Source: Torpedo marmorata
Taxonomy: Eukaryota
DNA length: 64,000 nt
Reading direction: 5' to 3'
Assembly (NCBI GenBank): GCA_977017645.1
Contig: OZ360236.1
Span: 63,922,001 to 63,986,000, forward strand
Shown: piece by piece, positions 5,457-64,000 of the stretch
How the letters are laid out: each line of letters opens with the position of its first letter
Position numbering within the stretch: position 1 is the first letter of the stretch
Made by a program: the position numbers and the translations under genes
The notes under the pieces: model-generated
Told to the model about the DNA's origin: nothing
Databases searched by the model: none
Seen by the model: only the letters and a program-made list of their open reading frames with translations

Positions 5457-6187
5457 TCCCGTGACCAATGAGGCAGAGGAGCGTCTGCAGGACCACTTTG
5501 AATCGGTGGACTGGACCGTATTCAAGAACTCATCCTTAGACTCGAATGAATATGCAACATGAGGGTCAAGAACTTCAAATTTCTGGGTGTGAACATCTCC
5601 GAGGATCTGTCCTGGAGCCTCCATGTCGATGCAATCACGAAGAAGGCTCGCCAGCGGCTATACTTTATGAGGTGTTTGAGGAGATTCGATATGTCACCGA
5701 AGACTCTCGAAAACTTCTACAGGTGTACCGTGAAGAGCATTCTGGCTGGTTGCATCACTGTCTGGTACAGAGGTGCCAACGCTCAGGACAAGAAAAATCT
5801 CCAGAGTGTTGTTAACTCAGCCTGCGACGTCACGGGCACCAAACTTCACTCCATCGAGGACATCTACAAGAGGCGGTGTCTTAAGAAAGCAACCTCTATC
5901 CTCAAGGACGCCCACCACCCAGGCCATGCCCTCTTCACTCTGCTACCATCGGAAAAAAGGTACAGAGCCTAAAAACGAGCACTCAGTGGCAAAGGACAGC
6001 TTCTTCCCCGCTGCCATCAGATTGCTGAATGATCAATGAACCAAAGACAGTGCCTTACTTTGACTTTTCATGCACTATTTTTATTTATTGTTGTAATGTG
6101 GTTTATATGAATGTTTGCACTGTGATGCTTGCCGCAAAACAATGAATTTTGTGACTTGTTCATGACAATAAATTCTGATTCTGATCT
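5457..6187 (+). mobile_element. Rex1/Babar-like LINE 3' end (RT C-terminus), internally deleted
   Basis: VKNFKFLGVNISEDLSWSLHVDAITKKARQRLYF...DSFFPAAIRLLN; 3' tail GACAATAAATTCTGATTCTGAT; highly similar copies at 17990, 32725 and 63225. Confidence 0.85.
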
Positions 6188-7044: not shown

Positions 7045-7395
7045 ATATATGGTAGTCCTTCGATTTGAAGAAGACACGTTGTTGTGAAGTTCATCTGTGG
7101 ACACGAAGGTGACTCTGCAGTCCCAGTCTGGAAGTGCAGAGTCTAGCACAATGGGGGCACTGGAAGTCCGTTGTTGTAATAACTGTGGCTGCTGCTTTGT
7201 GATGCCATTCACGGTTTTCCATCAGTTTTTGTCAGCGCCTGTCTTCAAAACTGGTGTACGCTTCATAGCACAGGGCTGACCAGCGGGTTCTGTCAGCAGC
7301 CGCAGCTTCGAGTTCTCTTGGCTCGATGTCACAGTAGCGTCTTTATGGCGCTTGCGTGGACGACCTTGAGGTCTCCTTCCGGTCTCCATTTCTTA
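7045..7395 (-). mobile_element. RTE-clade LINE 3' fragment with terminal C2H2 zinc finger
   Basis: Minus strand METGRRPQGRPRKRHKD, then after a frameshift ...AAADRTRWSALCYE...FQCPHCARLCTSRLGLQSHLRVHR*. Confidence 0.75.
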
Positions 7396-7829
7396 GCATG
7401 ATAGAATCTGGCATTCTATCATGCCTTTATCATTGCCAAACTAGTGCTATATATTAACACTATCTTAGCTTTCTGCAAATCTCCAATTTAACGGAAACTC
7501 CAACGTGCAACTCTGCCATCTGTCACAAGCACAGGACACATCTAATCTGGGTGGTTTATGCTCGATCATTAGCAGTGGGGCTGGGTCTTGTATGCAGCTC
7601 TTATTCATCCATAACCTGGTCATCAATGCCTAGTTTGGGTTTTGCGAGGACCATTCAGACCTCATCACAGCCTTGTCTGGATGTGGATAAAACAGCTATC
7701 TTCTATTGAGAGTCAACGCCCTTGACATCAAGGCAGCAAGTGCCCAAGTGTGGCTTCAAGGAGCCCAGTAAAACTGAAGTCAATAGGCATCAAGGGGGAA
7801 CCACTCCAATAGTTAGAATCATACACGCA

Positions 7830-8769
7830 CAGGGCCGGATTAACCTAGTAGCAAAAGTAGCATATGCTACGGGCCCCGCATTTTCAAGGCCCTGCGCTAA
7901 ATGCTTGCAAGCTATCAATTCAAGTACAAGGACATGCTGCGCTTCGCCGTGGCCCAGTCTGAGGCAGCCCGCCAGATGGGCGACCCGGATCACATCACCG
8001 AGGCCTACCTCAACCTGGCACGGGGCCAGGAGAAGCTGTGCGAGTTCTCCGAGTTCGTGGCCTACTGCAGGACGTGCCTCGGCGCCGAGGGCGGCCCGCT
8101 GCGCCTGCAGTTCAACGGGCAGATCTGCCTCAGCATGGGCAACACCTACCTCGGCCTCAGCGTCTTCCAGAAGGCGCTCGAGTGCGTCGAGAAGGCGCTG
8201 CGCTACGCGCACGGCAACGACGACAAGATGCTGGAGTGCCGCATGTGCTGCAGCCTGGGCGCCTTCTACATGCAGCTGAAGGAATATGAGAAGGCGCTCT
8301 TCTTCCCCTGTAAGGGCGCCGAGCTGGTCGCTGACCACGGCAGGGGCTGGAGCCTCAAGTACAAGGCCATGAGCAGCTACCACACTGGGACCTCGGGTCA
8401 TTGGGGTGGGGGTGACACTGGGATAGGGTGGCCATTTCAAACTTACCAAAACGGAGGACATGCAGGGGTCAGCGTCAGAAACTCTCTCCGGCTGGGGGGG
8501 GGGCGCCGTCACACTTCCCCCTCATTGCGCACGCGTGAGTCGGCACTCGCTCATGCGCGCGAGAAGAAACATGGCCACGCACGCAGGTAAGTGCCCTTTC
8601 TGCCACTTAATTTGTCCTCCATTTGGGGGTGTAGGGTCTACACCCCCAAATGGAGGACAAATTAATGTCAGGCTCGAGGTTTATGCGTTTTAATATTTGT
8701 GTATTTTTAAAATTTAGGGCCCCTTTATAACATATGCTACAGGCCCCGCACTAGCTTAATCCGGCCCTG
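7830..8769. mobile_element. Non-autonomous hAT-type DNA transposon carrying a captured RAPSN fragment (Pack-hAT)
   Basis: TIRs CAGGGCCGGATTAACCTAGT (7830-7849) and ACTAGCTTAATCCGGCCCTG (8750-8769), 19/20 match; subterminal direct repeat CATATGCTAC[G/A]GGCCCCGCA (7861-7880, 8731-8750); 8-bp flanks TACACGCA (7822-7829) / TACATACA (8770-8777) differing only at a CpG. Confidence 0.88.
7921..8384 (+). pseudogene. RAPSN: Intronless internal fragment of rapsyn (43 kDa acetylcholine-receptor-associated protein), TPR region; lies within chimeric ORF 7901-8590
   Basis: [22 protein letters not shown]...[14 protein letters not shown]...GQICLSMGN...[30 protein letters not shown]...[14 protein letters not shown]...[12 protein letters not shown] is clearly rapsyn (about residues 58-211). 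It lacks the myristoylated N-terminus and the RING domain; no stop or frameshift. Confidence 0.92.
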
Positions 8770-9120
8770 TACATACACAAAGGATGATGGTTGTTGTTGG
8801 ACGTTAAGCAACGCTGCCCTGGGACATCACTGTAAGAATTCCTCAGGGCAGTATCTGAGATGCAAATATCTTTGGCTGTTCATCATTTATCTTCCTTCCA
8901 TCATAAAGGATGTTCACTGATCATTGCACAATGTTCTATTTCATTGACAACTCTCAGCACACAAAGCATACCATTCTTAGATAATATTCAGACATAGGCT
9001 GAAAAATAATCTTCCCAATCTTATTTCATAGCTTAAAATCCTTTGTGTAACATTGAGGATTGTATATGTGAAATGATTAATTATCCATTTTAATGTTCCC
9101 TATTTTTATTATTCTTTCAG

Positions 9121-9281
9121 TTACGACAGTGCCTCTAGAAGTGCCTTTCTCAGATTTTGGCAATTACCTGGATAATCATCAGTTGATCAAGCTGATAGCA
9201 ATATCAGTTGATATACGAACAAATGAAAATGCTTTGGCAATGAAAGATATTTGTGTGGTCAAACCTGTTATCGAAATAAAG
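9121..9281 (+). CDS. TGM2: Transglutaminase 2-like, exon 11 equivalent
   Basis: 161 bp, TTTCAG|...AAG|GTAAT; TTVPLEV...LIKL...LAMKDICVVKPVIEIK. Confidence 0.85.
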
Positions 9282-9384
9282 GTAATAATCTTCAACAACT
9301 GTCAACTACTTTAATGCAGGCATTAAAATTAATCAGCCAGTCTACGAGGTTATATCACTATGTTTCATGACATTCAGTTATTTT

Positions 9385-14919: not shown

Positions 14920-15147
14920 AATTAGACATAATTTAACAGGCCCTTTCGGCACACGAGCCCGTGCCGCCCAATTACACCCAATTGACCTACAACTCCGGTA
15001 CGTTTTGAAGGGTGGGAGGAAACTGGAGCACCCAGAGGAAACCCACGCAGACGCGGAGAGAACGTACAAACTTCTTACAGACAGTGCCGGATTCGATCCC
15101 AGGTCGCTGGCGCTGTAACAGCGTTGCGCTAACCAAGCGTGCTGCCC
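14920..15147 (-). mobile_element. V-SINE (HE1-like), near full length
   Basis: Reverse complement begins GGGCAGCACG...GGTTAGCGCAACGCTGTTACAGCGCCAGCGACCTGGGATCGAATCC (tRNA-like A/B boxes), followed by the V-domain core. Confidence 0.85.
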
Positions 15148-16689: not shown

Positions 16690-16916
16690 TTTAGAGATAT
16701 AGAACAATAACAGGCCCTTCCAGCCCATGAGCCTGCACCACCCAAATACACCAATTAACCTACAAACCGCAAACGTTTTTCTTGGAGGGTGGGAGGAAAC
16801 TCACGCAGGTCATGGGCAGAATGTACAAACTCCTTACAGACAGTGCCAGATTCAAACGCATGTCGCTGGCACTGTAATAGCATTGTGCTAACCGCTAATG
16901 CTAACCGTGCTGCCCT
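16690..16916 (-). mobile_element. V-SINE (HE1-like), internally deleted
   Basis: Same head and tail as the 14920-15147 copy. Confidence 0.8.
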
Positions 16917-17987
16917 AATGTAGGATGTAGCTGTGTTCCATTGGCTACTATCTTCAAGCTTGTACACAGCCAACATTTTATTTCGATAATACATTTCCAC
17001 GATTTTAAATATGAATCCAAATACTTGTGATGTTTACCTTCTGGATATTTCAACTATAGCTTTGCTTTCATTGCATATGATAATGCTAAAGAATAGCGTA
17101 GATAAAGGACACTGCTATTACTAATGAAATATCAACAATTTGAAACTGTTTTTCTATCCACAAATTTGGCTTCATTGGCTGGGAATTTCCAACATTTTGT
17201 GATTTAAGTCAAATATCTAGCATGTGCAGTATTTCACTTTCGGTTATTAATTTCCAGAGTACTGACAATTGTATTAATTGCATTTCGTTAATCAAGATAA
17301 TAAAGCTGATTCTCATTACACAATAGTAAGTATATTTGAACTGGGCTCTAATTACCTCATTATCATTGTAATGTAATTAATAAATAGTCTAGGAATAAAC
17401 ATTTGCCTTTGCAAAGACCCTGAATGGAAGAAGGTGCCAGAGGTACAAGGAAAATGAATGTTTCGCTCTTTCACCACTTAGTTTGGTTACTGCCTCTGGG
17501 AAGAGGATAATAGCAACAACCAAACCGAGTGTTTCAAAACAGGAGAATGGGAGCCATGGGCTGATTTCTTACACAAGGGAACTCAATTTGAGGATCAGGT
17601 AGTTTATGGGCTAAAGTAGTTACAGAAAATAGGGAAATGGTGAGCCAATGAAGCAATTCGTACACAAGGAAGTGGTTTTAAAATTGGGGCCACAGGGTTA
17701 TTGGAGGCATGATATACAGCAGAACTTTATGGAGGATAGGAGAGTTAGGAAATTTTTATATATGGTGAAAGATGAGAAGTCACACAACAGAACACTTCTT
17801 GAGTGAAGAGGTAGTGATTGAAGTTTTTGGATGATGAATTGAATAATTGAAGTGAATATTGAAAATTCAAGAGCAGGAAAATCTGGGAGGAGGAGGTTAA
17901 GGTGTAAAATCAACTTGGGGTGGGGGGGTCAAGTCACATGTAGAGATTGTGAAAACCCACATTCAGTAGAGATGTGGTCAAAGAGAT

Positions 17988-19377
17988 GAATCAGAATTTA
18001 TTGTCATGAACAAGTCACAAAATTCGGTGTTTTGCGGCAGCATCATAGTGCAAACATTCATAGAACAATAAATATTTTTAAAAAAATAATAGTGCACGAA
18101 AAGTAAGGCAGTGTCTTTGGTTCAGTGATTATTCAGGAATCTGATGGCAGCGGGGAAGAAGCTGTCCTTGGGCCGCTGAGTGCTCATCTTTAGGCTTCTG
18201 TACCTTTTACCCGATGGTAGCAGAGTGAAGAGGGCATGGCCTGGGTGGTGGGGGTCTTTGAGGATAGAGCTGCTTTTTTAAGACACCGCCTCATGTAGAT
18301 GTCCTCGATGGAGTGAAGTCCGGTGCCTGTGATGTCACAGGCCGAGTTAACAACCCTCTGGAGTTTATTCTTGTCCTGAGAGTTGGCGCCTCCATACCAG
18401 GCAGTGATGCAACCAGCCAGAATGCTCTCCACGATACACCTGTAGACGTTTACGAGAGTCTTCGGTGACATACCGAATCTCCTCAACCACCTCAAAAAGT
18501 ATAGCTGACGAGCCTTCTTCATGATTGCATCGACATGGAGGCTCCAAGACAGATCCTCAGAGATGTTTTTTTAAAATATTTTATTAAAAATTTTTTGTTC
18601 ATACATGCATAATTTGTACAATACATAAAATATCAATTCATTATTATTATTATTTATACATGATCACTGTCCCAACCCCCCCTCCCCCCAAACCAAAACC
18701 CCAGAAAGGAAGAAAGAAAACAAAGGAAAATAAATAAAAAGAAAAATATGAAGATAAAGTAACCTGGATGGTAAGAAGTCGCTACCTGCAACACAGTTCT
18801 AATTAGTTACTTTTAAAAAAAAATCCTAATTCTCTCAAGGAGATTAATGAGGAACTCGGGGTGGAGAAATCTATTAATTTATTCCTACTATTTGTAAATA
18901 TGGGCGCAAAATTTTCAAAAATACATCATATTTGTTTCTTAAATTATAAGTAATCTTCTCAAGTGGGATACCACTACACATTTCTGTATTCCACCGCTCC
19001 ATACCCAAATTGGAATCTGATTTCCAATTTACCGCTATACATTTTTTTGCTACTGCTAATGCGATTTTTAAGAATTCTTTTTGATTCATATTTTATTTCA
19101 ATTTGGGTCTTATCCCCTCAATATTTCCTAATAAAAACAACATTGGATCTTGTGGAAATTTAGTTCCCGGAATCTGCTCTAAAAAGATTTTTAAGATCCT
19201 CGGAGATGTTGACACCCAGGAAGTTGAAGTTCTTGACCCTCTCCACTACTGAGCCCTCGATGAGGACTGGGTCATGTTCCTCTGACTTCCTCCTGAAGTC
19301 CACAATCATCTCCTTGGTTTTGCTTACGTTGAGCACAAGGTTGCTGGTGTGACACCACTCAACGAGCTGATCTATCT
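17988..19377 (-). mobile_element. Rex1/Babar-like LINE 3' fragment interrupted by an L1
   Basis: RT C-terminal ORF (18190-18522) continues at 19194-19377 (GSVVERVKNFNFLGVNISED). Confidence 0.85.
18568..19193 (-). mobile_element. 5'-truncated L1/Tx1-clade LINE nested in the Rex element
   Basis: ORF2 C-terminus ...LAVAKKCIAVNWKS...PLEKITYNLR; A-rich tail; 17-bp TSD AGATCCTC[A/G]GAGATGTT (18551-18567 / 19194-19210). Confidence 0.88.
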
Positions 19378-25514: not shown

Positions 25515-25742
25515 GCATGGTTAGCATAGCGGTTAGTGCAATGCTATTACAGCGCAGGTGACCGGGTTCGAATCCGGCCCTGTCTGTAAGGAGTTTGTTC
25601 GTTCTCCCTGTGTCTGTGTGGGTTTCCTCTGGGTGCTCCAGTTTCCTCCCCTCCTTCAAAAAGTACTAGGGTTATAGGTTAATTAGGGTATTTTGGCGGC
25701 ACCGGCTCGTGGACCAGAAGGGCGTTATGTCTAAATTAAAAG
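25515..25742 (+). mobile_element. V-SINE (HE1-like)
   Basis: GGTTAGTGCAATGCTATTACAGCG...GGTTCGAATCC...GGAGTTTGTTCGTTCTCCC core. Confidence 0.82.
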
Positions 25743-26282: not shown

Positions 26283-26609
26283 TCCCACACTGATCCCACT
26301 GCCCCGCTCTCTCCCCACAGCCCCGTGTCAGTCCCCACACTGATCCCACAGCCCTGCGTCAGTCCCCACACTGATCCCACTGCCCAGCTCTCTGCCCACA
26401 GCCGCGCGTCGGGCCCCACACTGATCCCACTGCCTCGCTCTCTGCCCACAGCCCCGCGTCGGGCCCCACACTGATCCCACAGCCCCGCGTCGGGCCCCAC
26501 ACTGATCCCACAGCCCCGCTCTCTGCCCACAGCCCCGCGTCAGTCCCCACACTGATCCCACTGCCCCGCTCTCTGCCCACAGCCCCGCGTCAGTCCCCAC
26601 ACTGATCCC
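26283..26609. repeat. C-rich minisatellite with ~29-bp and ~50-bp unit variants
   Basis: Recurrent CCCCACACTGATCCCAC(TGCCCCGCTCTCTGCCCAC)AGCCCCGCGTC[AGT/GGG]. Confidence 0.92.
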
Positions 26610-26750
26610 TACTTACAAATAAGTTTACAGGTACTCTACAGTATCCCATATAGCTTTGCTAAGTATATAATATGGTGTTCGCACAACGTTCACATCGCAT
26701 AATGCCCAATTTCACAGAACGTATCGTGGATGTTAAGCGGCGCATACCTG
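26610..26750. mobile_element. Tigger/Golem-like DNA transposon right end
   Basis: TTCGCACAACG...CAGAACGTATCG...GTTAAGCGGCGCATACCTG followed by TA; left TIR not found. Confidence 0.55.
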
Positions 26751-27869: not shown

Positions 27870-28066
27870 TCATTTAGAGATACAGCACCATAACAGGCCC
27901 TTGCTACCCAAATATACCCATGTAACCAATTAACCCCGCATGTCTTTGGAATGTGGGGCGAAACCAAGACACTGGGAGAACGTACAAACTCGTTACACTC
28001 AGCACCGGATTCGAACGTGGGTCGTTAGCGCTGTAATAATGCTGTGCTACTACACTAATCATGCCG
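27870..28066 (-). mobile_element. V-SINE (HE1-like), degenerate
   Basis: Shares the GGAGAACGTACAAACTC...GGATTCGAAC motifs with the other copies. Confidence 0.7.
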
Positions 28067-31814: not shown

Positions 31815-32724
31815 CTAGTTGTGAGAAACAGAAAAATTAACAACATTACAGCAAACTTACACTGTTTCAGGAAAAATTTATATCAATCCAATTTCTATAG
31901 GTAAATGTTTTCAGCTGCAAGAATAAATAATACCTTCAGAGATTTGTGGGCATACACAGAATGCACAACACCACATTAACAATTTAAATCAAACCCTTAA
32001 ATAACCTCAAACTGTGTGCGAAGAGCCCATGTGGTGTTTATTATACTTCACTGTGATGACAAATCTATGCTAAAATATTTGATAACTATGGGTCATCTTA
32101 AGTAAGGATCTTTAAGTTGCTCTGTGTGCATCTACATTCAATCGAACTAAAAATGGAAACTACAACATACATTCCTCCAAATTATTTGTGCTCATCATTA
32201 TAACAATAAGGTTATTATAACAAATTTTTTAAAAAAGTAACCATAAAGAGGTGTTAAAGTGGACCTGAGGTGCTCCAAAGCAAACATGAACACAGCTGCA
32301 AAAACAAACTTTTAATCACTTTGCAAGGTGTGAAAACTCCATTACAGCAAGAAGCACAGCCACGGGTTGCTAGCTAACTCCAAAGGAGACTGCCTCGTGG
32401 CTTACAAAATCACTTAATTTATAGTTTCTTATCTCTAGTTTCTGGAACATTCGAAGGGACTGCTCCTTATAAGTTCATATTCCTTACAATTCTCTTAGGA
32501 TTCATCAGTTAGTTTCACACCACTCTACCAAATAAGGAGCTTATCATCAGCTCCCAAACAGGTAACAAGAAAGGAATGTAGCCCAAAAATGCAGCCCACC
32601 TTTTTCCATTCCAGTCGCTATTTTAAACTTACATTTTCATTAAATTTTAAAACCTACTTTCTCAGAGGAACTCGTGCTAACATTTTGGGTACATGCTGCC
32701 ATTATATGGTAATATAATACAAAC

Positions 32725-33270
32725 ATGAAGAAGGCTCGCCAGTGGCTATACTTTGTGAGGTGTTTGAGGAGATTTGGTATGTCACCAAAAACTCTCAAAC
32801 TTCTACAGGTGTACAATGGAGAGCATTCTGGCTGGTTGCATCACTGTCTGGTACAGAAGTGCCAACGCTCAGGACAAGAAAAAAACTCCAGAAGGTTGTT
32901 AACTCGGCCTGCGATATCACAGGCACCAGACTTCACTCCATCGAAGACATCTACATGAGGCGGTGTCTTAAGAAAGCAGCCTCTATCCTCAAGGACCCCC
33001 ACCACCCAGGCCATGCTCTCTTCACTCTGCTACCATCAGGAAAAAGGTACAGGAGCCTAAAGATGAGCACTCAGCGGCCCAAGGACAGCTTCTTCCCCGC
33101 TGCCATCAGATTCCTGAATGATCAATGAACCAAAGACAGTGCCTTACTTTGACTTTTTGTGCACTATTCTTTATTTATTTTTGTAAGGTGGTTTATATGA
33201 ATGTTTGCACTGTGATGCTGCCGCAAAACAACAAATTTCGTGACTTGTTCATGACAATAAATTCTGATTC
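32725..33270 (+). mobile_element. Rex1/Babar-like LINE 3' end
   Basis: KKARQWLYFVRCLRRF...DSFFPAAIRFLNDQ; GACAATAAATTCTGATTC tail. Confidence 0.87.
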
Positions 33271-40218: not shown

Positions 40219-40415
40219 AGGGCAGCACGATTAGCGCAACGCTTTTACAGCACCAGTGATCGGGACCAGGGTTCAAATCCGCGCTGTCTGTAAGGAGTTT
40301 GTACGTTCTCCCTGTGTCTGTTTTCCCTGGGGGCTCCGGTTTCCTCCCACCCTTCAAAACGTACCGAGGGCGTAGGTCAATCAGGTGCATTTGGGCGGCA
40401 CGGGCTCATGGGCCA
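40219..40415 (+). mobile_element. V-SINE (HE1-like)
   Basis: GGGCAGCACGATTAGCGCAACGC...GGTTCAAATCC...GGAGTTTGTACGTTCTCCC core. Confidence 0.82.
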
Positions 40416-40987: not shown

Positions 40988-41578
40988 CAGGTGCCTAACC
41001 TTTTATCCGTAATTCCGAAAACTGAACATTTTTTCCAGTATATTTTCAGGTGTTTAGCTTAGTTTGAGCCAGTTAATGTTTGAAGTTTTACTGTATGTTT
41101 TACTTAAAAATAAAAAGTACGCTAGTAATTTTATGATCTATCTTTATCTCACTTCATTTACCACTCCCCCGTCCAGCGCCGCCGCGAACACCCCCGTCCA
41201 GCGCCGCCGCGAACACCCCCGTCCAGCGCCGCCGCGAACACCCCCGTCCAGCGCAGCCATGAGCACCGCCGCGAACACCACCGTGCAGCGCCACCGCGAA
41301 CACTCCCATGCAGCGCCGCAGCGAACACCCCTGTCCAACGCCACCACGGACGCCGCTGCGAACACCCCTGTCCAGCGCCGCCACAATTCCCCCCCCCCCC
41401 CCAAACAAGCGCCGCCATCCAGAAACCCTTCTAGTTGGAGTGTGTCTTTGTTTTGGCGAATCTGAAGCAACGCAATTATTTAAAAGTACCGCCATTAAAA
41501 TAATTCTATAATCCGAAAAAATCCCAATTCCGAAAAGTGTCAGGTCCCAAGGATTTCGGATAAAATGTTAGGCATCTG
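40988..41578. mobile_element. Tc1/mariner-type MITE with internal GC-rich minisatellite (41165-41385)
   Basis: TA-flanked TIRs CAGGTGCCTAACCTTTTATCCG / CGGATAAAATGTTAGGCATCTG; internal ~25-bp repeat CCCCGTCCAGCGCCGCCGCGAACAC. Confidence 0.88.
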
Positions 41579-48790: not shown

Positions 48791-48959
48791 AATAACCACA
48801 AAGAAATAAGTGAGGGGGAAAATAGGTAGGAGTGTGGAATAGAGGGAAAGATGTAAATATGTGGGGGGGAATGGCGGAAAGGGGTAGGAGAAGTGGAGAG
48901 ATAGAGGGGCTATATTTAGAAGGGAAGGAGTGATAGAGGTAGGGGTAGAGAGATACAGC

Positions 48960-50500
48960 TGGGGAGGGTGGTCTAGATGGGGGGAGGGTGGTCTAGATGG
49001 GGGGAGGGTGGTCTAGATGGGGGGAGGGTGGTCTAGATGGTGTGAAGGAGGTCTAGATGGTGTGAAGGAGGTCTAGATGGTGTGAAGGAGGTCTAGATGG
49101 GGGAGGGTGGTTTAGATGGTGTGAAGGAGGTCTAGATGGGGGGAAGGAGGTCTAGATGGGGGAAGGAGGTCTAGATGGGGGAAGGGGGAAGGAGGTCTAG
49201 ATGGTGTGAAGGAGGTCTAGATGGGGGAAGGAGGTCTAAATGGGGGAGGGTGGTCTAGATGGAGGGAAGGAGGTCTCGATGGAGGGAAGGAGGTCTCGAT
49301 GGGAGGAAGGAGGTCTCGATGGGGGAAGGAGGTCTAGATGGGGGAGGGTGGTCTCGATGGGGGGAAGGAGGTCTAGATGGGGGATGGGGGAGGGTGGTCT
49401 AGATGGGGAGGGTGGTCTAGATGGGGGGAAGGAGGTCTCGATGGGGGGAGGGTGGTCTAGATGGGGGGAAGGAGGTCTCGATGGGGGGAAGGAGGTCTCG
49501 ATGGGGGAAGGAGGTCTCGATGGGGGAAGGAGGTCTCGATGGGGGAAGGAGGTCTCGATGGGGGAAGGTCTAGATGGTGTGAAGGAGGTCTAGATGGGGG
49601 AAGGAGGTCTAGATGGGGGAAGGAGGTCTAGATGGGGGAGGGTGGTCTCGATGGGGGGAAGGAGGTCTAGATGGGGGAAGGAGGTCTAGATGGGGGAAGG
49701 TGGTCTAGATGGTGTGAAGGAGGTCTAGATGGGGAAGGAGGTCTCGATGGGGGAAGGAGGTCTCGATGGGGGGAGGGTGGTCTCGATGGGGGGGAGGGTG
49801 GTCTCGATGGGGGGAAGGAGGTCTCGATGGGGGAGGGAGGTCTCGATGGGGGGAAGGAGGTCTCGATGGGGGGAAGGTGGTCTCGATGGGGGGAAGGAGG
49901 TCTCGATGGGGGGAGGGAGGTCTCGATGGGGGGAGGGAGGTCTCGATGGGGGGAAGGAGGTCTCGATGGGGGGAAGGAGGTCTAGATGGGGGGGGGAGGG
50001 AGGTCTCGATGGGGGAGGGAGGTCTCGATGGGGGAAGGAGGTCTCGATGGGGGGAGGGTGGTCTCGATGGGGGGAGGGTGGTCTCGATGGGGGAGGGAGG
50101 TCTCGATGGGGGGAAGGAGGTCTCGATGGGGGGAAGGTGGTCTCGATGGGGGGAAGGTGGTCTCGATGGGGGGAGGGAGGTCTCGATGGGGGGAGGGAGG
50201 TCTCGATGGGGGGAAGGAGGTCTCGATGGGGGGAAGGAGGTCTCGATGGGGGGGGGAAGGAGGTCTAGATGGGGGGGAAGGAGGTCTCGATGGGGGGGGA
50301 AGGAGGTCTCGATGGGGGCAGGGAGGTCTCGATGGGGGAGGGAGGTCTCGATGGGGGAAGGAGGTCTCGATGGGGGGAGGGTGGTCTCGATGGGGGGAGG
50401 GTGGTCTCGATGGGGGGAGGGTGGTCTCGATGGGGGGAGGGTGGTCTCGATGGGGGGAGGGTGGTCTCGATGGGGGGAAGGAGGTCTAGATGGGGGGAAG
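48960..50500. repeat. G-rich ~19-21-bp minisatellite, about 1.5 kb
   Basis: Tandem G4-8-A[A/G]G[A/T]GGTCT[A/C]GAT units; accounts for all the Gly/Arg-rich ORFs at 49240-50539. Confidence 0.97.
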
Positions 50501-53617: not shown

Positions 53618-53867
53618 TGGGTGGCACGGTTAGCGCAATGCCTTTGCAGCGCCAGCGATCGGGACCGGACCTGGGTTCGAATCCCGCGCTGTCTGTAAGG
53701 AGTTTGTACGTTCTCCCCATGTCTGCGTGGGTTTTCTCCGGGGGCTCCGGTTTCCTCCCACCTTTCAAAATGTACCGGGGGTGTAGGTTAATGGGGTGTA
53801 AATTGGGCGGCACGAACTCATAGGACTGAAATGGCTTGTTACAGTGCTGTATGTCTAAATTTAAATT
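53618..53867 (+). mobile_element. V-SINE (HE1-like), full length
   Basis: GGGTGGCACGGTTAGCGCAATG...GGTTCGAATCCC...GGAGTTTGTACGTTCTCCCCATGTCTGCGTGGGTTTTCTCCGGGGGCTCCGGTTTCCTCCCA; tail TAAATTTAAATT. Confidence 0.88.
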
Positions 53868-55032: not shown

Positions 55033-55288
55033 ATTTAAATTTTAAATTTAAAAAATTTAAATTAAATTTAGACATACAGCACGGTAACAGGCCCTTTCGG
55101 CCCACGAGCCTGGTTCGCCCAATTACACCCAATTAACCTACAACCTCCATATGTTTTTTGAACGGTGAGAGGAAACCCATGCAGACCCTAGGAGAACGTG
55201 CAAACTCCTTACAGGCAGCGCCGGATTCGAACTCTGGTCGCTGGCACTGTAACGGCGTTGCACTAACCACGACACTAACCATGCCGCC
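55033..55288 (-). mobile_element. V-SINE (HE1-like)
   Basis: Reverse complement of the same family, with a (TTTAAA)n tail. Confidence 0.82.
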
Positions 55289-63224: not shown

Positions 63225-64000
63225 CCTAAGGATGCGTGCTTAGCCCGCTGCTCTACTTGTTATACACCCATGACTGTAGCCAGGCACAATTCCAATGCCA
63301 TCTACAAGTTTGCCGATGACACCACAGTTGTCAGCAGAATCACAAACGGCAATGAGGAAGCGTACAGGAGGGAGATAGATCAGCTCGTTAAATGGAGTAA
63401 TGACAACAACCTTGCGCTCAACGTCAGCAAAACCAAGGAGATGATTGTGGACTTCAGGAGGAAGTCAGGGGAACATGACCCAGTCCTCATCGAGGGCTCA
63501 GTGGTGGAGAGGGTCAAGAACTTCAAATTCCTGAGTGTCAACATCTCCGAGGATCTGTCCTGGAGCCTCCACGTTGATGCAATCACAAAGAAAGCTCACC
63601 AGCGGCTATACTTTGTGAGGTGTCTGAGGAGATTCGGTATGTCACTGAAGACTCTCGTAAACTTCTACAGGTGTACCATGGAGAGCATTCTGGCTGGTTG
63701 CATCACTGCCTGGTATGGAGGCGCCAACTTTCAGGACAAGAATAAACTCCAGAGGGTTGTTAACTCGGCCTGCGACATCACAGGCACCAGACTTCACTCC
63801 ATCGAGGATATCTACATGAGACAGTGTCTTTAAAAAAAGCAGCCTCTATCCTCAAAGACCCCCACCACCCAGGCCAGGCCCTCTTCATCTGCTACCATTG
63901 GGAAAAAGGTACAGGAGCCTAAAGATGAGCACTCAATGGCACAAGGACAGCTTCTTTCCGCTGCCATCAGATTCCTGAATAATCAATGAACCAAAGACAC
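63225..64000 (+). mobile_element. Rex1/Babar-like LINE RT 3' part
   Basis: GCVLSPLLY..., KFADDTTVVSRI...NNLALNVSKTKEMIVDFRR...FKFLSVNISEDLSW. Confidence 0.9.

What the first reader, a model, noticed from the sequence alone, without database searches (positions are those of the whole stretch)
7830..8769. hAT-type DNA transposon carrying a spliced (mRNA-derived) rapsyn fragment: a vertebrate Pack-transposon with cDNA cargo
Seen: a 940-bp insert with 20-bp TIRs (19/20), a subterminal direct repeat and a CpG-decayed 8-bp TSD cleanly interrupts a CR1 LINE. About 464 bp of very GC-rich rapsyn coding sequence sits some 90 bp inside its left end. Established (from memory): human RAPSN has introns at c.192/193 (EMLK|FAV) and c.531/532 (QVK|DYEK). 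The fragment reads through both positions (DMLR-FAV, QLK-EYEK) with no intron. It is truncated at both ends and has no poly(A) or TSD of its own, unlike an ordinary LINE-made retrocopy. Inference: processed RAPSN RNA/cDNA was copied into a cut-and-paste element, e.g. by template switching during gap repair, and may have been dispersed with it. Known Pack-MULE/Pack-TIR captures are mostly genomic DNA, so spliced cargo in a vertebrate DNA transposon is unusual. Rapsyn is the abundant AChR-clustering protein of the electric organ, and the sequence resembles Torpedo rapsyn.
Basis: partly seen in the sequence, partly recalled or inferred. Interest (0 to 1): 0.92.

Follow-up and report, generated by a model that had tools for sequence, protein, structure and literature searches.

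The report
Ray transposon family carrying intronless rapsyn
This is one old, decaying copy of a small cut-and-paste transposon family of rays that picked up an intron-free piece of the muscle-synapse gene rapsyn and spread it through the genome, a rare event in vertebrates but one already seen in fungi.

Summary
Positions 7830-8769 are a 940-bp element with 20-nt terminal inverted repeats (19/20) and flanking 8-mers matching 6/8. A 465-bp open rapsyn fragment lies at 7922-8386.

Contigs of public runs from three coded organisms end exactly at 7830 and 8769 with unrelated flanks, so these are real transposon ends. About 13-28 contigs per site cover the rapsyn part at 84-90% likeness. Ten of 32 listed contigs bridge the left arm into the cargo, and two of these continue into foreign flanks. 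The cargo was therefore mobilised and amplified after capture.

The fragment is closest to ray rapsyn (Mobula/Hypanus 118/155) and groups with Mobula in a tree. It aligns without a gap across the intron sites documented in human (c.192/193, c.531/532), bird and teleost.

I could not check whether the host's own RAPSN has these introns. A catshark gene model on a 1.7-kb contig leaves room only for short introns. Direct cDNA capture cannot be told from copying a retrocopy.

This copy decays neutrally, and I found no sign of function. hAT elements with transcript-derived cargo are already described in fungi, and Pack-hATs in animals. This is a new member of a known kind, of moderate interest.

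The parts
7822..7829 (.). left copy of the putative 8-bp target-site duplication
   Evidence: 6 of 8 match with 8770-8777. The chance rate at this spacing in the window is 0.77%.
7830..7849 (+). left terminal inverted repeat (starts CAGGG)
   Evidence: Contigs with unrelated upstream sequence end exactly at 7830: 91, 226, 115 and 4 in X1, X2, X6 and X18, agreement 0.32-0.57 (table 7).
7858..7880 (+). subterminal repeat, left copy (holds a GCATATGC palindrome and GGGCCCC)
   Evidence: D2 (23 nt, 91% to 8728-8750) and I8.
7830..7921 (+). left arm of the transposon backbone
   Evidence: Summed depth is 10-100 times that of the cargo. Most family members leave this copy near 7889: 39, 108 and 91 contigs (tables 2 and 7).
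7922..8386 (+). rapsyn (RAPSN) cargo, codons about 58-212. It holds the last 7 codons of exon 1, all of exon 2 (7943-8281) and the first 35 codons of exon 3, with no intron. GC3 is 94%.
8387..8423 (.). 37-nt filler of unknown origin between the cargo and the next repeat piece
   Evidence: No rapsyn homology. Covered by the cargo-bearing contigs of X6 (table 8).
8424..8680 (.). piece of a second, much more abundant repeat, including a perfect 28-nt palindrome at 8607-8665
   Evidence: Loose ends with diverse flanks at 8424 (74 contigs in X2, 48 in X6). Other copies run on with their own consensus after 8680. Depth reaches 84,202 in X2. Palindrome: I1. Only sub-threshold Rfam hairpin hits.
8681..8769 (+). 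right arm of the backbone, with a subterminal repeat (8728-8750) and the right TIR (8750-8769)
   Evidence: Loose ends with unrelated downstream sequence at 8769: 85, 130 and 130 contigs.
8770..8777 (.). right copy of the putative target-site duplication
7560..7829 (+). left part of the interrupted, decayed LINE-like reverse-transcriptase remnant
   Evidence: Frame translations, read by eye. Many diverged contigs lie on it. Family label not tested.
8778..8985 (+). right part of the same LINE-like remnant
   Evidence: Frame translations. Pfam silent on a 25-aa piece.

Best explanation
This locus is one old copy of a non-autonomous, hAT-like cut-and-paste transposon family of rays. The family backbone is short: two arms of about 90 bp, each with a 20-nt TIR and a subterminal motif. 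A transposase supplied by another element would recognise these arms.

In an ancestor of this subfamily, the interior of one copy was replaced by a 763-bp patchwork. It holds a both-ends-truncated, intron-free piece of the host RAPSN message (end of exon 1 to mid exon 3), 37 nt of filler, and a piece of another repeat. The most likely route is break or gap repair that copied ectopic templates. The rapsyn template was processed RNA, either as cDNA or as an existing retrocopy.

Both ends stayed intact, so the composite was still mobilised and multiplied to at least tens of copies. These now differ from this copy by 10-16%. This copy inserted into a LINE remnant with an 8-bp duplication and has since drifted neutrally.

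Shown: the ends, the multi-copy state, the shared arm/cargo junction, the ray origin of the cargo, and the neutral decay. Inferred: the hAT transposase, the repair mechanism, and the RNA origin.
For: Ends and mobility: contigs of three coded organisms stop exactly at 7830 and 8769 and continue into unrelated sequence (91/226/115 and 85/130/130 contigs, agreement 0.32-0.37, table 7).

Cargo is multi-copy: 13-28 contigs per listed site inside 7928-8375 in X1, X2 and X6 (table 3), apart from five lower counts of 4-7 in X1 and X6 near the cargo's right end. The listed pieces differ from this copy by 10-16% (table 8).

Shared junction: 10 of the 32 listed pieces cross 7921/7922 with at least 31 letters on each side (X1 records 2, 3; X2 17, 18, 19; X6 25-29). 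Seven of 32 cross 8386/8387, all in X6. X6 records 25 and 26 carry 424 and 136 further letters before 7830 that do not lie on this window's flank, so they sit at other loci.

Origin: the top three of 120 listed hits are elasmobranch rapsyns. Identity is 118/155 to Mobula, 114 to Amblyraja and 112 to Mustelus, against 103-110 for 13 bony vertebrates. The cargo is sister to Mobula at 90/84 support. At 6 of 10 amino-acid sites where most other copies differ from this one, their residue is Mobula's.

No introns: the alignment is gapless across 7942|7943 and 8281|8282. Human variants c.193-15C>T (IVS1-15) and c.532-2A>G place introns there (passages). Passer isoforms have a roughly 70-aa insert exactly at the first site. 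Centroberyx X5 skips the 53 aa that start at the second site.

Mechanism precedent: DSBs in mouse zygotes captured internal, spliced, poly(A)-less mRNA pieces and patchworks of repeats (PMC4516963, abstract and passages).

Neutral decay: 10 non-synonymous against 3 synonymous differences. An open frame is expected in 44% of simulations with 30 substitutions.
Against: The host's own RAPSN gene could not be read, so introns 1 and 2 are inferred from bony vertebrates only. A Scyliorhinus torazame model (245 aa, contig of 1,721 nt) spans exons 1-3 and leaves at most 983 nt for both introns. They are therefore short or absent in a shark.

No loose ends at 7943 or 8281, which would mark the parental exon 2, appear among the listed ones. 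However, 1,180 loose ends were not shown.

No transposase, no autonomous partner and no second copy lie in the window. The TSD length rests on this one 6/8 pair, which does not fit the weak hAT target consensus as I recall it.

No listed contig bridges either end of this very insertion by 31 letters. X1 record 1 reaches only 18 letters into the element.

The only run guessed to be RNA (X18) has no depth on the cargo.
Confidence: 0.7

Rival explanations
1. Ordinary DNA-level capture. In elasmobranchs, RAPSN has lost, or never had, introns 1 and 2, so a contiguous genomic stretch was copied into the element.
For: The catshark gene model P0349 covers exons 1-3 on a 1,721-nt contig, leaving at most 983 nt for two introns. 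No elasmobranch isoform seen marks either intron site. The evidence for these introns comes only from bony vertebrates.
Against: P0349 leaves the rapsyn sequence exactly at the exon-3 end, as a genomic exon-intron border would, so the shark gene does have conserved borders. Downstream borders are conserved in sharks and rays: Stegostoma X2 joins at the exon 3/4 border, and there are 353- and 371-aa exon-skipping isoforms. The cargo's GC3 is 94%, and GC-rich genes tend to have short introns (recalled). That would explain the small contig. Intron loss is rare in vertebrates (general knowledge).
Confidence: 0.12
2. A nested LINE-made retrocopy. A processed RAPSN pseudogene inserted into a resident MITE by target-primed reverse transcription. 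Deletions then removed its poly(A), its 3' part and its own duplication before the composite amplified.
For: The cargo is intron-free. The surroundings are rich in LINE remnants.
Against: There is no A-run, no 3' exons or UTR, and no second duplication inside the element. The cargo is truncated at both ends and is followed by filler and a piece of another repeat. This is the pattern of repair-mediated capture (PMC4516963). It requires several extra deletion events.
Confidence: 0.08
3. Assembly chimera. The rapsyn piece was joined to transposon ends by the assembler and is not real at this locus.
For: No listed contig bridges either border of this particular insertion by 31 letters (table 8).
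Against: Independent Logan contigs from three coded organisms and three studies show the same arm-to-cargo junction. In X6 they also show the cargo-to-repeat junction (records 2, 3, 17-19, 25-32). X1 record 1 runs from the flank 18 letters into the TIR with 4 differences in 248.
Confidence: 0.02
4. A domesticated or functional gene piece. The 229-codon ORF (7901-8590), or an antisense or small RNA from the copies, acts on rapsyn or acetylcholine-receptor clustering.
For: The frame is open through 155 rapsyn codons, and an ATG lies 7 codons upstream. There are many copies homologous to a highly expressed muscle or electric-organ gene. Pack-MULE small-RNA effects are mentioned for plants in PMC8277862 (passage).
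Against: 10 of 13 listed differences from the other copies change the amino acid. An open frame is expected by chance in 44% of simulations, and the antisense frame is open too. The fragment lacks the myristoylated N-terminus, the coiled coil and the RING. The one run guessed to be RNA has no depth on the cargo.
Confidence: 0.03

Closest known systems
Pack-TIRs / Pack-hAT elements of animals (Tan et al. 2021, Nat Commun, PMC8277862; abstract, outline and passages read)
   Same: A TIR DNA transposon with a host gene fragment between its ends. hAT is the commonest carrier (208 of 370). The proposed origin is gap filling or template switching.
   Different: That survey found only four multicopy cases (three in a frog, one in an alligator). 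It discarded intronless captures of multi-exon genes as possible retroduplicates. Here the cargo is intron-free, the family has at least tens of copies, and it is shared by three coded organisms. No shark or ray is mentioned there ('shark' occurs 0 times). I could not see its supplementary tables, which list the species.
hAT transposons carrying a histone H3 transcript copy in Dothideomycete fungi (Mob DNA 2019, PMC6710886; passages read)
   Same: A hAT element with a 20-bp TIR and 8-bp TSD. Its cargo shows exon-exon junctions without introns, read as capture of a transcript or retrocopy. It amplified to many copies, is old and decayed, and is shared by related species.
   Different: The fungal carrier is a 9.5-kb element with a transposase domain, and its cargo is a nearly whole small gene damaged by RIP. 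Here the carrier is a MITE-sized non-autonomous element in a vertebrate. The cargo is an internal fragment, and decay is by CpG transitions.
RT-product-mediated double-strand-break repair (Ono et al. 2015, Sci Rep, PMC4516963; abstract and passages read)
   Same: Inserted pieces are internal parts of spliced mRNAs, truncated at both ends, without poly(A) or TSD. They are often joined with pieces of repeats in one patchwork.
   Different: This was shown at CRISPR cuts in mouse zygotes, not inside a transposon, and the product was not mobile. Here it is only an inference from the anatomy. Microhomology at the junctions could not be tested without the parental sequence.
LINE-made processed pseudogenes (retrocopies)
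   Same: An intron-free copy of a host mRNA.
   Different: No poly(A), no 3' end of the message and no LINE-type duplication. The mobile unit is bounded by TIRs, and its copies end at those TIRs.
Pack-MULEs of plants (recalled; mentioned in PMC8277862)
   Same: Non-autonomous TIR elements that carry and amplify host gene fragments.
   Different: They belong to the Mutator superfamily with 9-bp TSDs. Their cargo is mostly genomic DNA with introns (recalled, not checked here).

Membership tests
hAT superfamily (non-autonomous member) | 8-bp target-site duplication | tested here: inconclusive
   One pair only, 6 of 8 identical, with a chance rate of 0.77% at this spacing. Other copies' flanks were seen only as a mixed consensus.
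hAT superfamily (non-autonomous member) | short TIRs starting CAG/TAG (recalled consensus YARNG) | tested here: met
   20-nt TIRs, 19/20, starting CAGGG. The consensus itself is recalled, not from a call.
hAT superfamily (non-autonomous member) | related autonomous element with a hAT transposase and the same ends | not testable with these tools
   None in the window. No eukaryote genome collection is on hand.
Pack-TIR (transduplicating TIR element) | host gene fragment lying between the two ends of a TIR element | tested here: met
   Rapsyn fragment 7922-8386 lies between arms 7830-7921 and 8681-8769.
Pack-TIR (transduplicating TIR element) | mobilised after capture: several copies with the same junction at different loci | tested here: met
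   10 of 32 listed contigs bridge the arm/cargo junction in three organisms. X6 records 25 and 26 continue into foreign flanks.
Pack-TIR (transduplicating TIR element) | parental gene elsewhere, not flanked by the element | not testable with these tools
   The only rapsyn homology in the window is the cargo. Ray genomes do encode full-length rapsyn: Mobula, Hypanus, Amblyraja.
Transcript-derived (spliced) cargo | exon-exon junctions where the parental gene has introns | tested here: inconclusive
   Gapless across both sites. Introns there are documented in human, a bird and a teleost. The source species was not tested. The shark model P0349 allows only short introns.
LINE-made processed pseudogene | 3' end of the mRNA with a poly(A) tract and a flanking LINE-type duplication | tested here: not met
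   The cargo ends in mid exon 3. No A-run and no internal duplication.
CR1 LINE (the interrupted flank) | reverse transcriptase of the CR1 clade | tested here: inconclusive
   RT-like motifs by eye on both sides. Pfam silent on the 26- and 25-aa stop-free pieces. No other copy in the window.

The most novel reading that the evidence does not exclude
In the germ line of a ray ancestor, a break in a hAT-type MITE was mended directly with reverse-transcribed, spliced RAPSN message plus scraps of other repeats. This is RT-product-mediated repair. The mended element stayed mobile and carried the exon-exon junctions to tens of loci across several species. It would be a natural, amplified vertebrate record of RNA-derived DNA entering a cut-and-paste transposon. 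The animal Pack-TIR survey filtered this class out by design. A bolder addition, not excluded, is that the many sense and antisense copies feed small RNAs against RAPSN.
Probability: 0.4. Interest if true: 0.6.

Novelty: new member of a known kind. Interest (0 to 1): 0.45.

Why it matters
Multicopy gene-carrying DNA transposons are rare in animals. One survey of 100 genomes found four, and it removed intron-free cargo on purpose.

A ray family with at least tens of copies that carry two exon-exon junctions shows that transcript-derived DNA can enter a vertebrate cut-and-paste element and travel with it. Such cases may be under-counted.

The family also gives a dated marker for ray genome evolution. 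It is a practical warning too: these copies will appear as partial 'rapsyn-like' genes in annotations of ray genomes. I see no evidence that it changes rapsyn biology.

Tried and rejected
Second copies in the window. A TIR search with up to 3 mismatches and blastn-short of the arms, middle and cargo found only the element itself. A 12-nt match at 25571-25582 lies in a tRNA-SINE and is chance.

LINE flank. blastn and tblastx of the flanks against the window gave only self hits. Pfam on the stop-free pieces found nothing. The CR1 label and the exact empty site therefore stay untested.

Rfam on 7300-9300 gave only sub-threshold hairpin matches to the palindrome.

Protein searches.
- (155-aa query, candidates 85-271 aa) returned mainly unnamed fragments.
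- (human isoform 6 as query) listed only mammals, birds, reptiles and one teleost (Centroberyx gerrardi), so it was no use for finding the source lineage.
- (229-aa ORF, region 8-162) found the elasmobranchs, but full-length 412-aa rapsyns, Torpedo's included, were outside its length range. The Torpedo comparison was therefore not made.
- PDB holds no rapsyn, only TPR relatives.
- The protein labelled Lampetra planeri (P0342) is 314 of 337 identical to a teleost. I did not count it as lamprey evidence.

Selection. The open frame is not significant. From one search's table 3 I used 13 cargo sites. I dropped 8330, where the other letter is in a minority of contigs, and 8393 and 8401, which lie outside the cargo. 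A further 300 differences were not shown by the tool.

Print. Searches for rapsyn with transposon, pseudogene and elasmobranch found no paper holding 'rapsyn' among the 10 listed of 25. The TIR motif gave one unrelated mussel paper. A search on hAT, MITE and cartilaginous fish found nothing on this family in 12 listed of 18. A search on intronless cargo in DNA transposons gave 5 papers, 4 listed. Those of PMC8277862 list species and cases and may bear on the novelty claim.

The candidate exon at 9121-9281 had no family hit.
Full report
WHAT IS THERE

Positions 7830-8769 form a 940-bp unit. Its first 20 nt (starting CAGGG) recur inverted at its last 20 nt with one mismatch. A search with up to three mismatches finds only these two sites in 64 kb, against none in 100 shuffles.

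A 23-nt subterminal motif is repeated directly in both arms (7858-7880 and 8728-8750, 91%). The 8-mers outside the ends match at 6 of 8. In this window, 485 of 63,040 pairs at that spacing (0.77%) do as well. The two mismatches, CG versus TA, need two changes, so plain CpG decay does not quite explain them.

The flanks, translated by eye, carry decayed reverse-transcriptase-like motifs in one orientation on both sides. Pfam is silent on the short stop-free pieces, and no other copy of that LINE part lies in the window. 'LINE remnant' is therefore likely, but 'CR1' is untested.

THE CARGO

Positions 7922-8386 translate into 155 codons without a stop and give TPR hits in Pfam. GC3 is 94% in a window of 41% GC.

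A search confined to the rapsyn part of the 229-codon ORF listed 120 of 127 hits. The first three are elasmobranch rapsyns: Mobula birostris 77%, Amblyraja radiata 74% and Mustelus asterias 73%.

In a MAFFT alignment with 21 named rapsyns the identities are as follows:
- Mobula: 118/155
- Amblyraja: 114/155
- Mustelus: 112/155
- Hemiscyllium: 110/155
- Stegostoma: 108/155
- Callorhinchus: 96/153
- 13 bony vertebrates: 103-110

Hypanus sabinus reads the same as Mobula over this stretch.

In a maximum-likelihood tree the cargo is sister to Mobula (ultrafast bootstrap 90, SH-aLRT 84). Both sit inside a ray-plus-chimaera group (90/96). The cargo's branch is long, so its placement is approximate.

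The only rapsyn homology in the window is this fragment.

THE INTRON SITES

The alignment is gapless from the cargo's first codon (rapsyn residue about 58) to its last (about 212).

Papers on human RAPSN variants name c.193-15C>T as IVS1-15 and c.532-2A>G as a splice-site change. The mouse gene is described there as having eight exons (PMC6451864 and PMC10494853, passages).

Named isoforms give the same borders:
- Two Passer montanus isoforms carry a roughly 70-residue insert exactly between the residues that flank the first site.
- Centroberyx isoform X5 jumps from the residue before the second site to the start of exon 4, skipping 53 residues.

In the representative search, many short proteins match only query residues 5-7 to 120-121, the span of exon 2. 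These are unnamed, and I used only the printed ranges.

In window coordinates the junctions are 7942|7943 and 8281|8282. The cargo therefore holds 7 codons of exon 1, all of exon 2 and 35 of the 53 codons of exon 3. No poly(A) follows it and no later exons are present.

THE WEAK POINT

I could not read RAPSN of the source species or of any elasmobranch genome. Shark and ray isoforms show conserved borders further downstream but none at introns 1 and 2.

A Scyliorhinus torazame model of 245 aa sits on a 1,721-nt contig. It covers exons 1-3 and leaves the protein exactly at the exon-3 end. That leaves at most 983 nt for both introns. Short introns would fit a very GC-rich gene, but absence is not excluded.

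A protein labelled Lampetra planeri is 314 of 337 identical to the teleost. I did not use it as an outgroup.

IS IT MOBILE, AND WAS THE CARGO SPREAD?

The look-up of sequencing runs listed 20 runs of five coded organisms, all kept as Logan contigs. I laid X1, X2, X6 and X18 (organisms A, B, C, E) on 7600-9000 at 80% likeness.

Transposon ends. Contigs stop exactly at 7830 (91, 226, 115 and 4 contigs) and at 8769 (85, 130 and 130 contigs) and continue into sequence with no consensus (agreement 0.32-0.37 in the three DNA runs). This is the signature of transposon ends at many loci.

Short family members. Most members leave this copy near 7889 and rejoin near 8698-8735. The common form of the family is therefore a short MITE.

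Cargo coverage. The rapsyn part is covered in each of X1, X2 and X6 by about 13-28 contigs per listed site, falling to 4-7 in X1 and X6 near the cargo's right end. The listed pieces differ from this copy by 10-16%.

Shared junctions, among the 32 pieces listed (7,625 more were not shown):
- Ten cross the left arm/cargo junction with at least 31 letters on each side (X1: 2; X2: 3; X6: 5).
- Seven cross the cargo's right junction, all in X6.
- X6 records 25 and 26 begin at 7830 after 424 and 136 contig letters that do not lie on this window's flank, so they are other loci.

The composite was therefore mobilised after capture and is shared by at least three coded organisms. Depth figures are sums over contigs, and I did not use them as copy numbers.

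This locus itself. X1 also holds this locus's flanks at about 98.5% identity (4 differences in 248 letters, 3 in 208). No listed contig bridges either border of this insertion by 31 letters.

RNA. X18, guessed to be RNA, covers only the arms.

STATE OF THIS COPY

There are 13 listed cargo sites where most other contigs differ from the window. Of these, 10 change the amino acid and 3 do not. At 6 of the 10, the other copies carry Mobula's residue. Most differences overall are C>T or G>A (table 1).

Simulated neutral change of 30 substitutions leaves the frame open in 44% of trials. The antisense frame is open as well. I see neutral decay and no sign of selection.

THE REST OF THE INTERIOR

Positions 8387-8423 are filler of unknown origin.

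Positions 8424-8680 are a piece of another, far more abundant repeat. There are diverse-flank loose ends at 8424 in X2 and X6. Other copies run on with their own consensus after 8680, and depth reaches 84,202 in X2. This piece holds a perfect 28-nt palindrome that reaches no Rfam threshold.

A patchwork of a spliced mRNA piece and repeat scraps, truncated at both ends and without poly(A) or a duplication, is what Ono et al. saw at repaired breaks in mouse zygotes (PMC4516963, abstract and passages).

MECHANISM AND ODDS

Best reading (0.7): a non-autonomous hAT-like element whose interior was replaced during break or gap repair by transcript-derived RAPSN sequence and other scraps. It was then mobilised in trans and amplified. 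This copy is an old insertion in a LINE remnant.

Within that reading I cannot separate direct cDNA capture (about 0.4 overall) from copying an existing retrocopy.

Rivals:
- Genomic DNA capture from an intron-poor gene: 0.12
- A nested LINE-made retrocopy trimmed by deletions: 0.08
- A functional gene piece: 0.03
- Assembly chimera: 0.02

COMPARISON WITH WHAT IS KNOWN

Tan et al. (PMC8277862, abstract, outline and passages) report 370 Pack-TIRs in 100 animal genomes, 208 of them on hAT. Only four are multicopy. They state that they discarded intronless captures of multi-exon parents.

Dhillon et al. (PMC6710886, passages) describe hAT elements in Dothideomycete fungi with a 20-bp TIR and 8-bp TSD. 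These captured a histone H3 transcript or retrocopy, amplified, and decayed over about 100 My.

The present family is the same kind of thing in a vertebrate. It differs in being carried on a MITE-sized element with an internal gene fragment.

My searches found nothing in print on this family or on rapsyn copies in transposons.

hAT membership rests on the CAGGG TIRs and one 6/8 duplication. The transposase test could not be run.

VERDICT

- Observation: confirmed.
- Interpretation: partly supported, with dispersal now shown and the RNA route still inferred.
- Novelty: new member of a known kind.
- Interest: 0.45.

Noticed in passing
window 8424-8680 (palindrome 8607-8665): A piece of a second repeat family inside the element. 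It has diverse-flank loose ends at 8424 and is hugely abundant in organism B (summed depth up to 84,202) but much less so in organism A. It holds a perfect 28-nt palindrome that looks like two repeat termini facing each other. Only sub-threshold miRNA-hairpin Rfam hits.
   Followed up: partly
window 9121-9281 (+): A candidate exon about 350 nt downstream of the element: 53 open codons with AG and GT borders read from the sequence. No Pfam family and nothing usable in the ESM Atlas. If it is real, the element sits in an intron.
   Followed up: partly
protein P0342 (named Lampetra planeri rapsyn isoform X6, 33.7-kb contig): It is 314 of 337 residues identical to the teleost Centroberyx gerrardi isoform, far closer than ray to gar over the cargo region (125/155). 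It looks like teleost DNA in a lamprey assembly.
   Followed up: partly
protein P0349 (Scyliorhinus torazame, contig 1,721 nt): A gene model covering rapsyn exons 1-3 on a very small contig. It leaves the protein exactly at the exon-3 end. Introns 1 and 2 are at most 983 nt together, or absent.
   Followed up: partly
window 7222-7389 (-): A 55-aa ORF rich in R, K and P. By recall it resembles the C-terminal tail of a LINE ORF2 on the opposite strand, so the neighbourhood is a patchwork of LINE pieces. Pfam gave no real hit.
   Followed up: partly
window 48860-50355; 26284-26676; 41150-41410: Minisatellite arrays: a roughly 20-nt unit over 1.5 kb, a 31/50-nt unit, and a GC-rich 25-nt unit.
   Followed up: no
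window 5561-6080, 32717-33171, 63509-63959 (+) and 17973-18567 (-): Four copies, 88-96% alike, of one repeat with an open reading frame. It is probably the 3' part of a young LINE family.
   Followed up: no
window 15059-15134, 16818-16893, 27977-28052, 55193-55268; 25554-25689, 40258-40387, 53663-53798: Several copies of tRNA-derived SINE-like repeats. One shares a chance 12-nt match with the element's TIR at 25571-25582.
   Followed up: no
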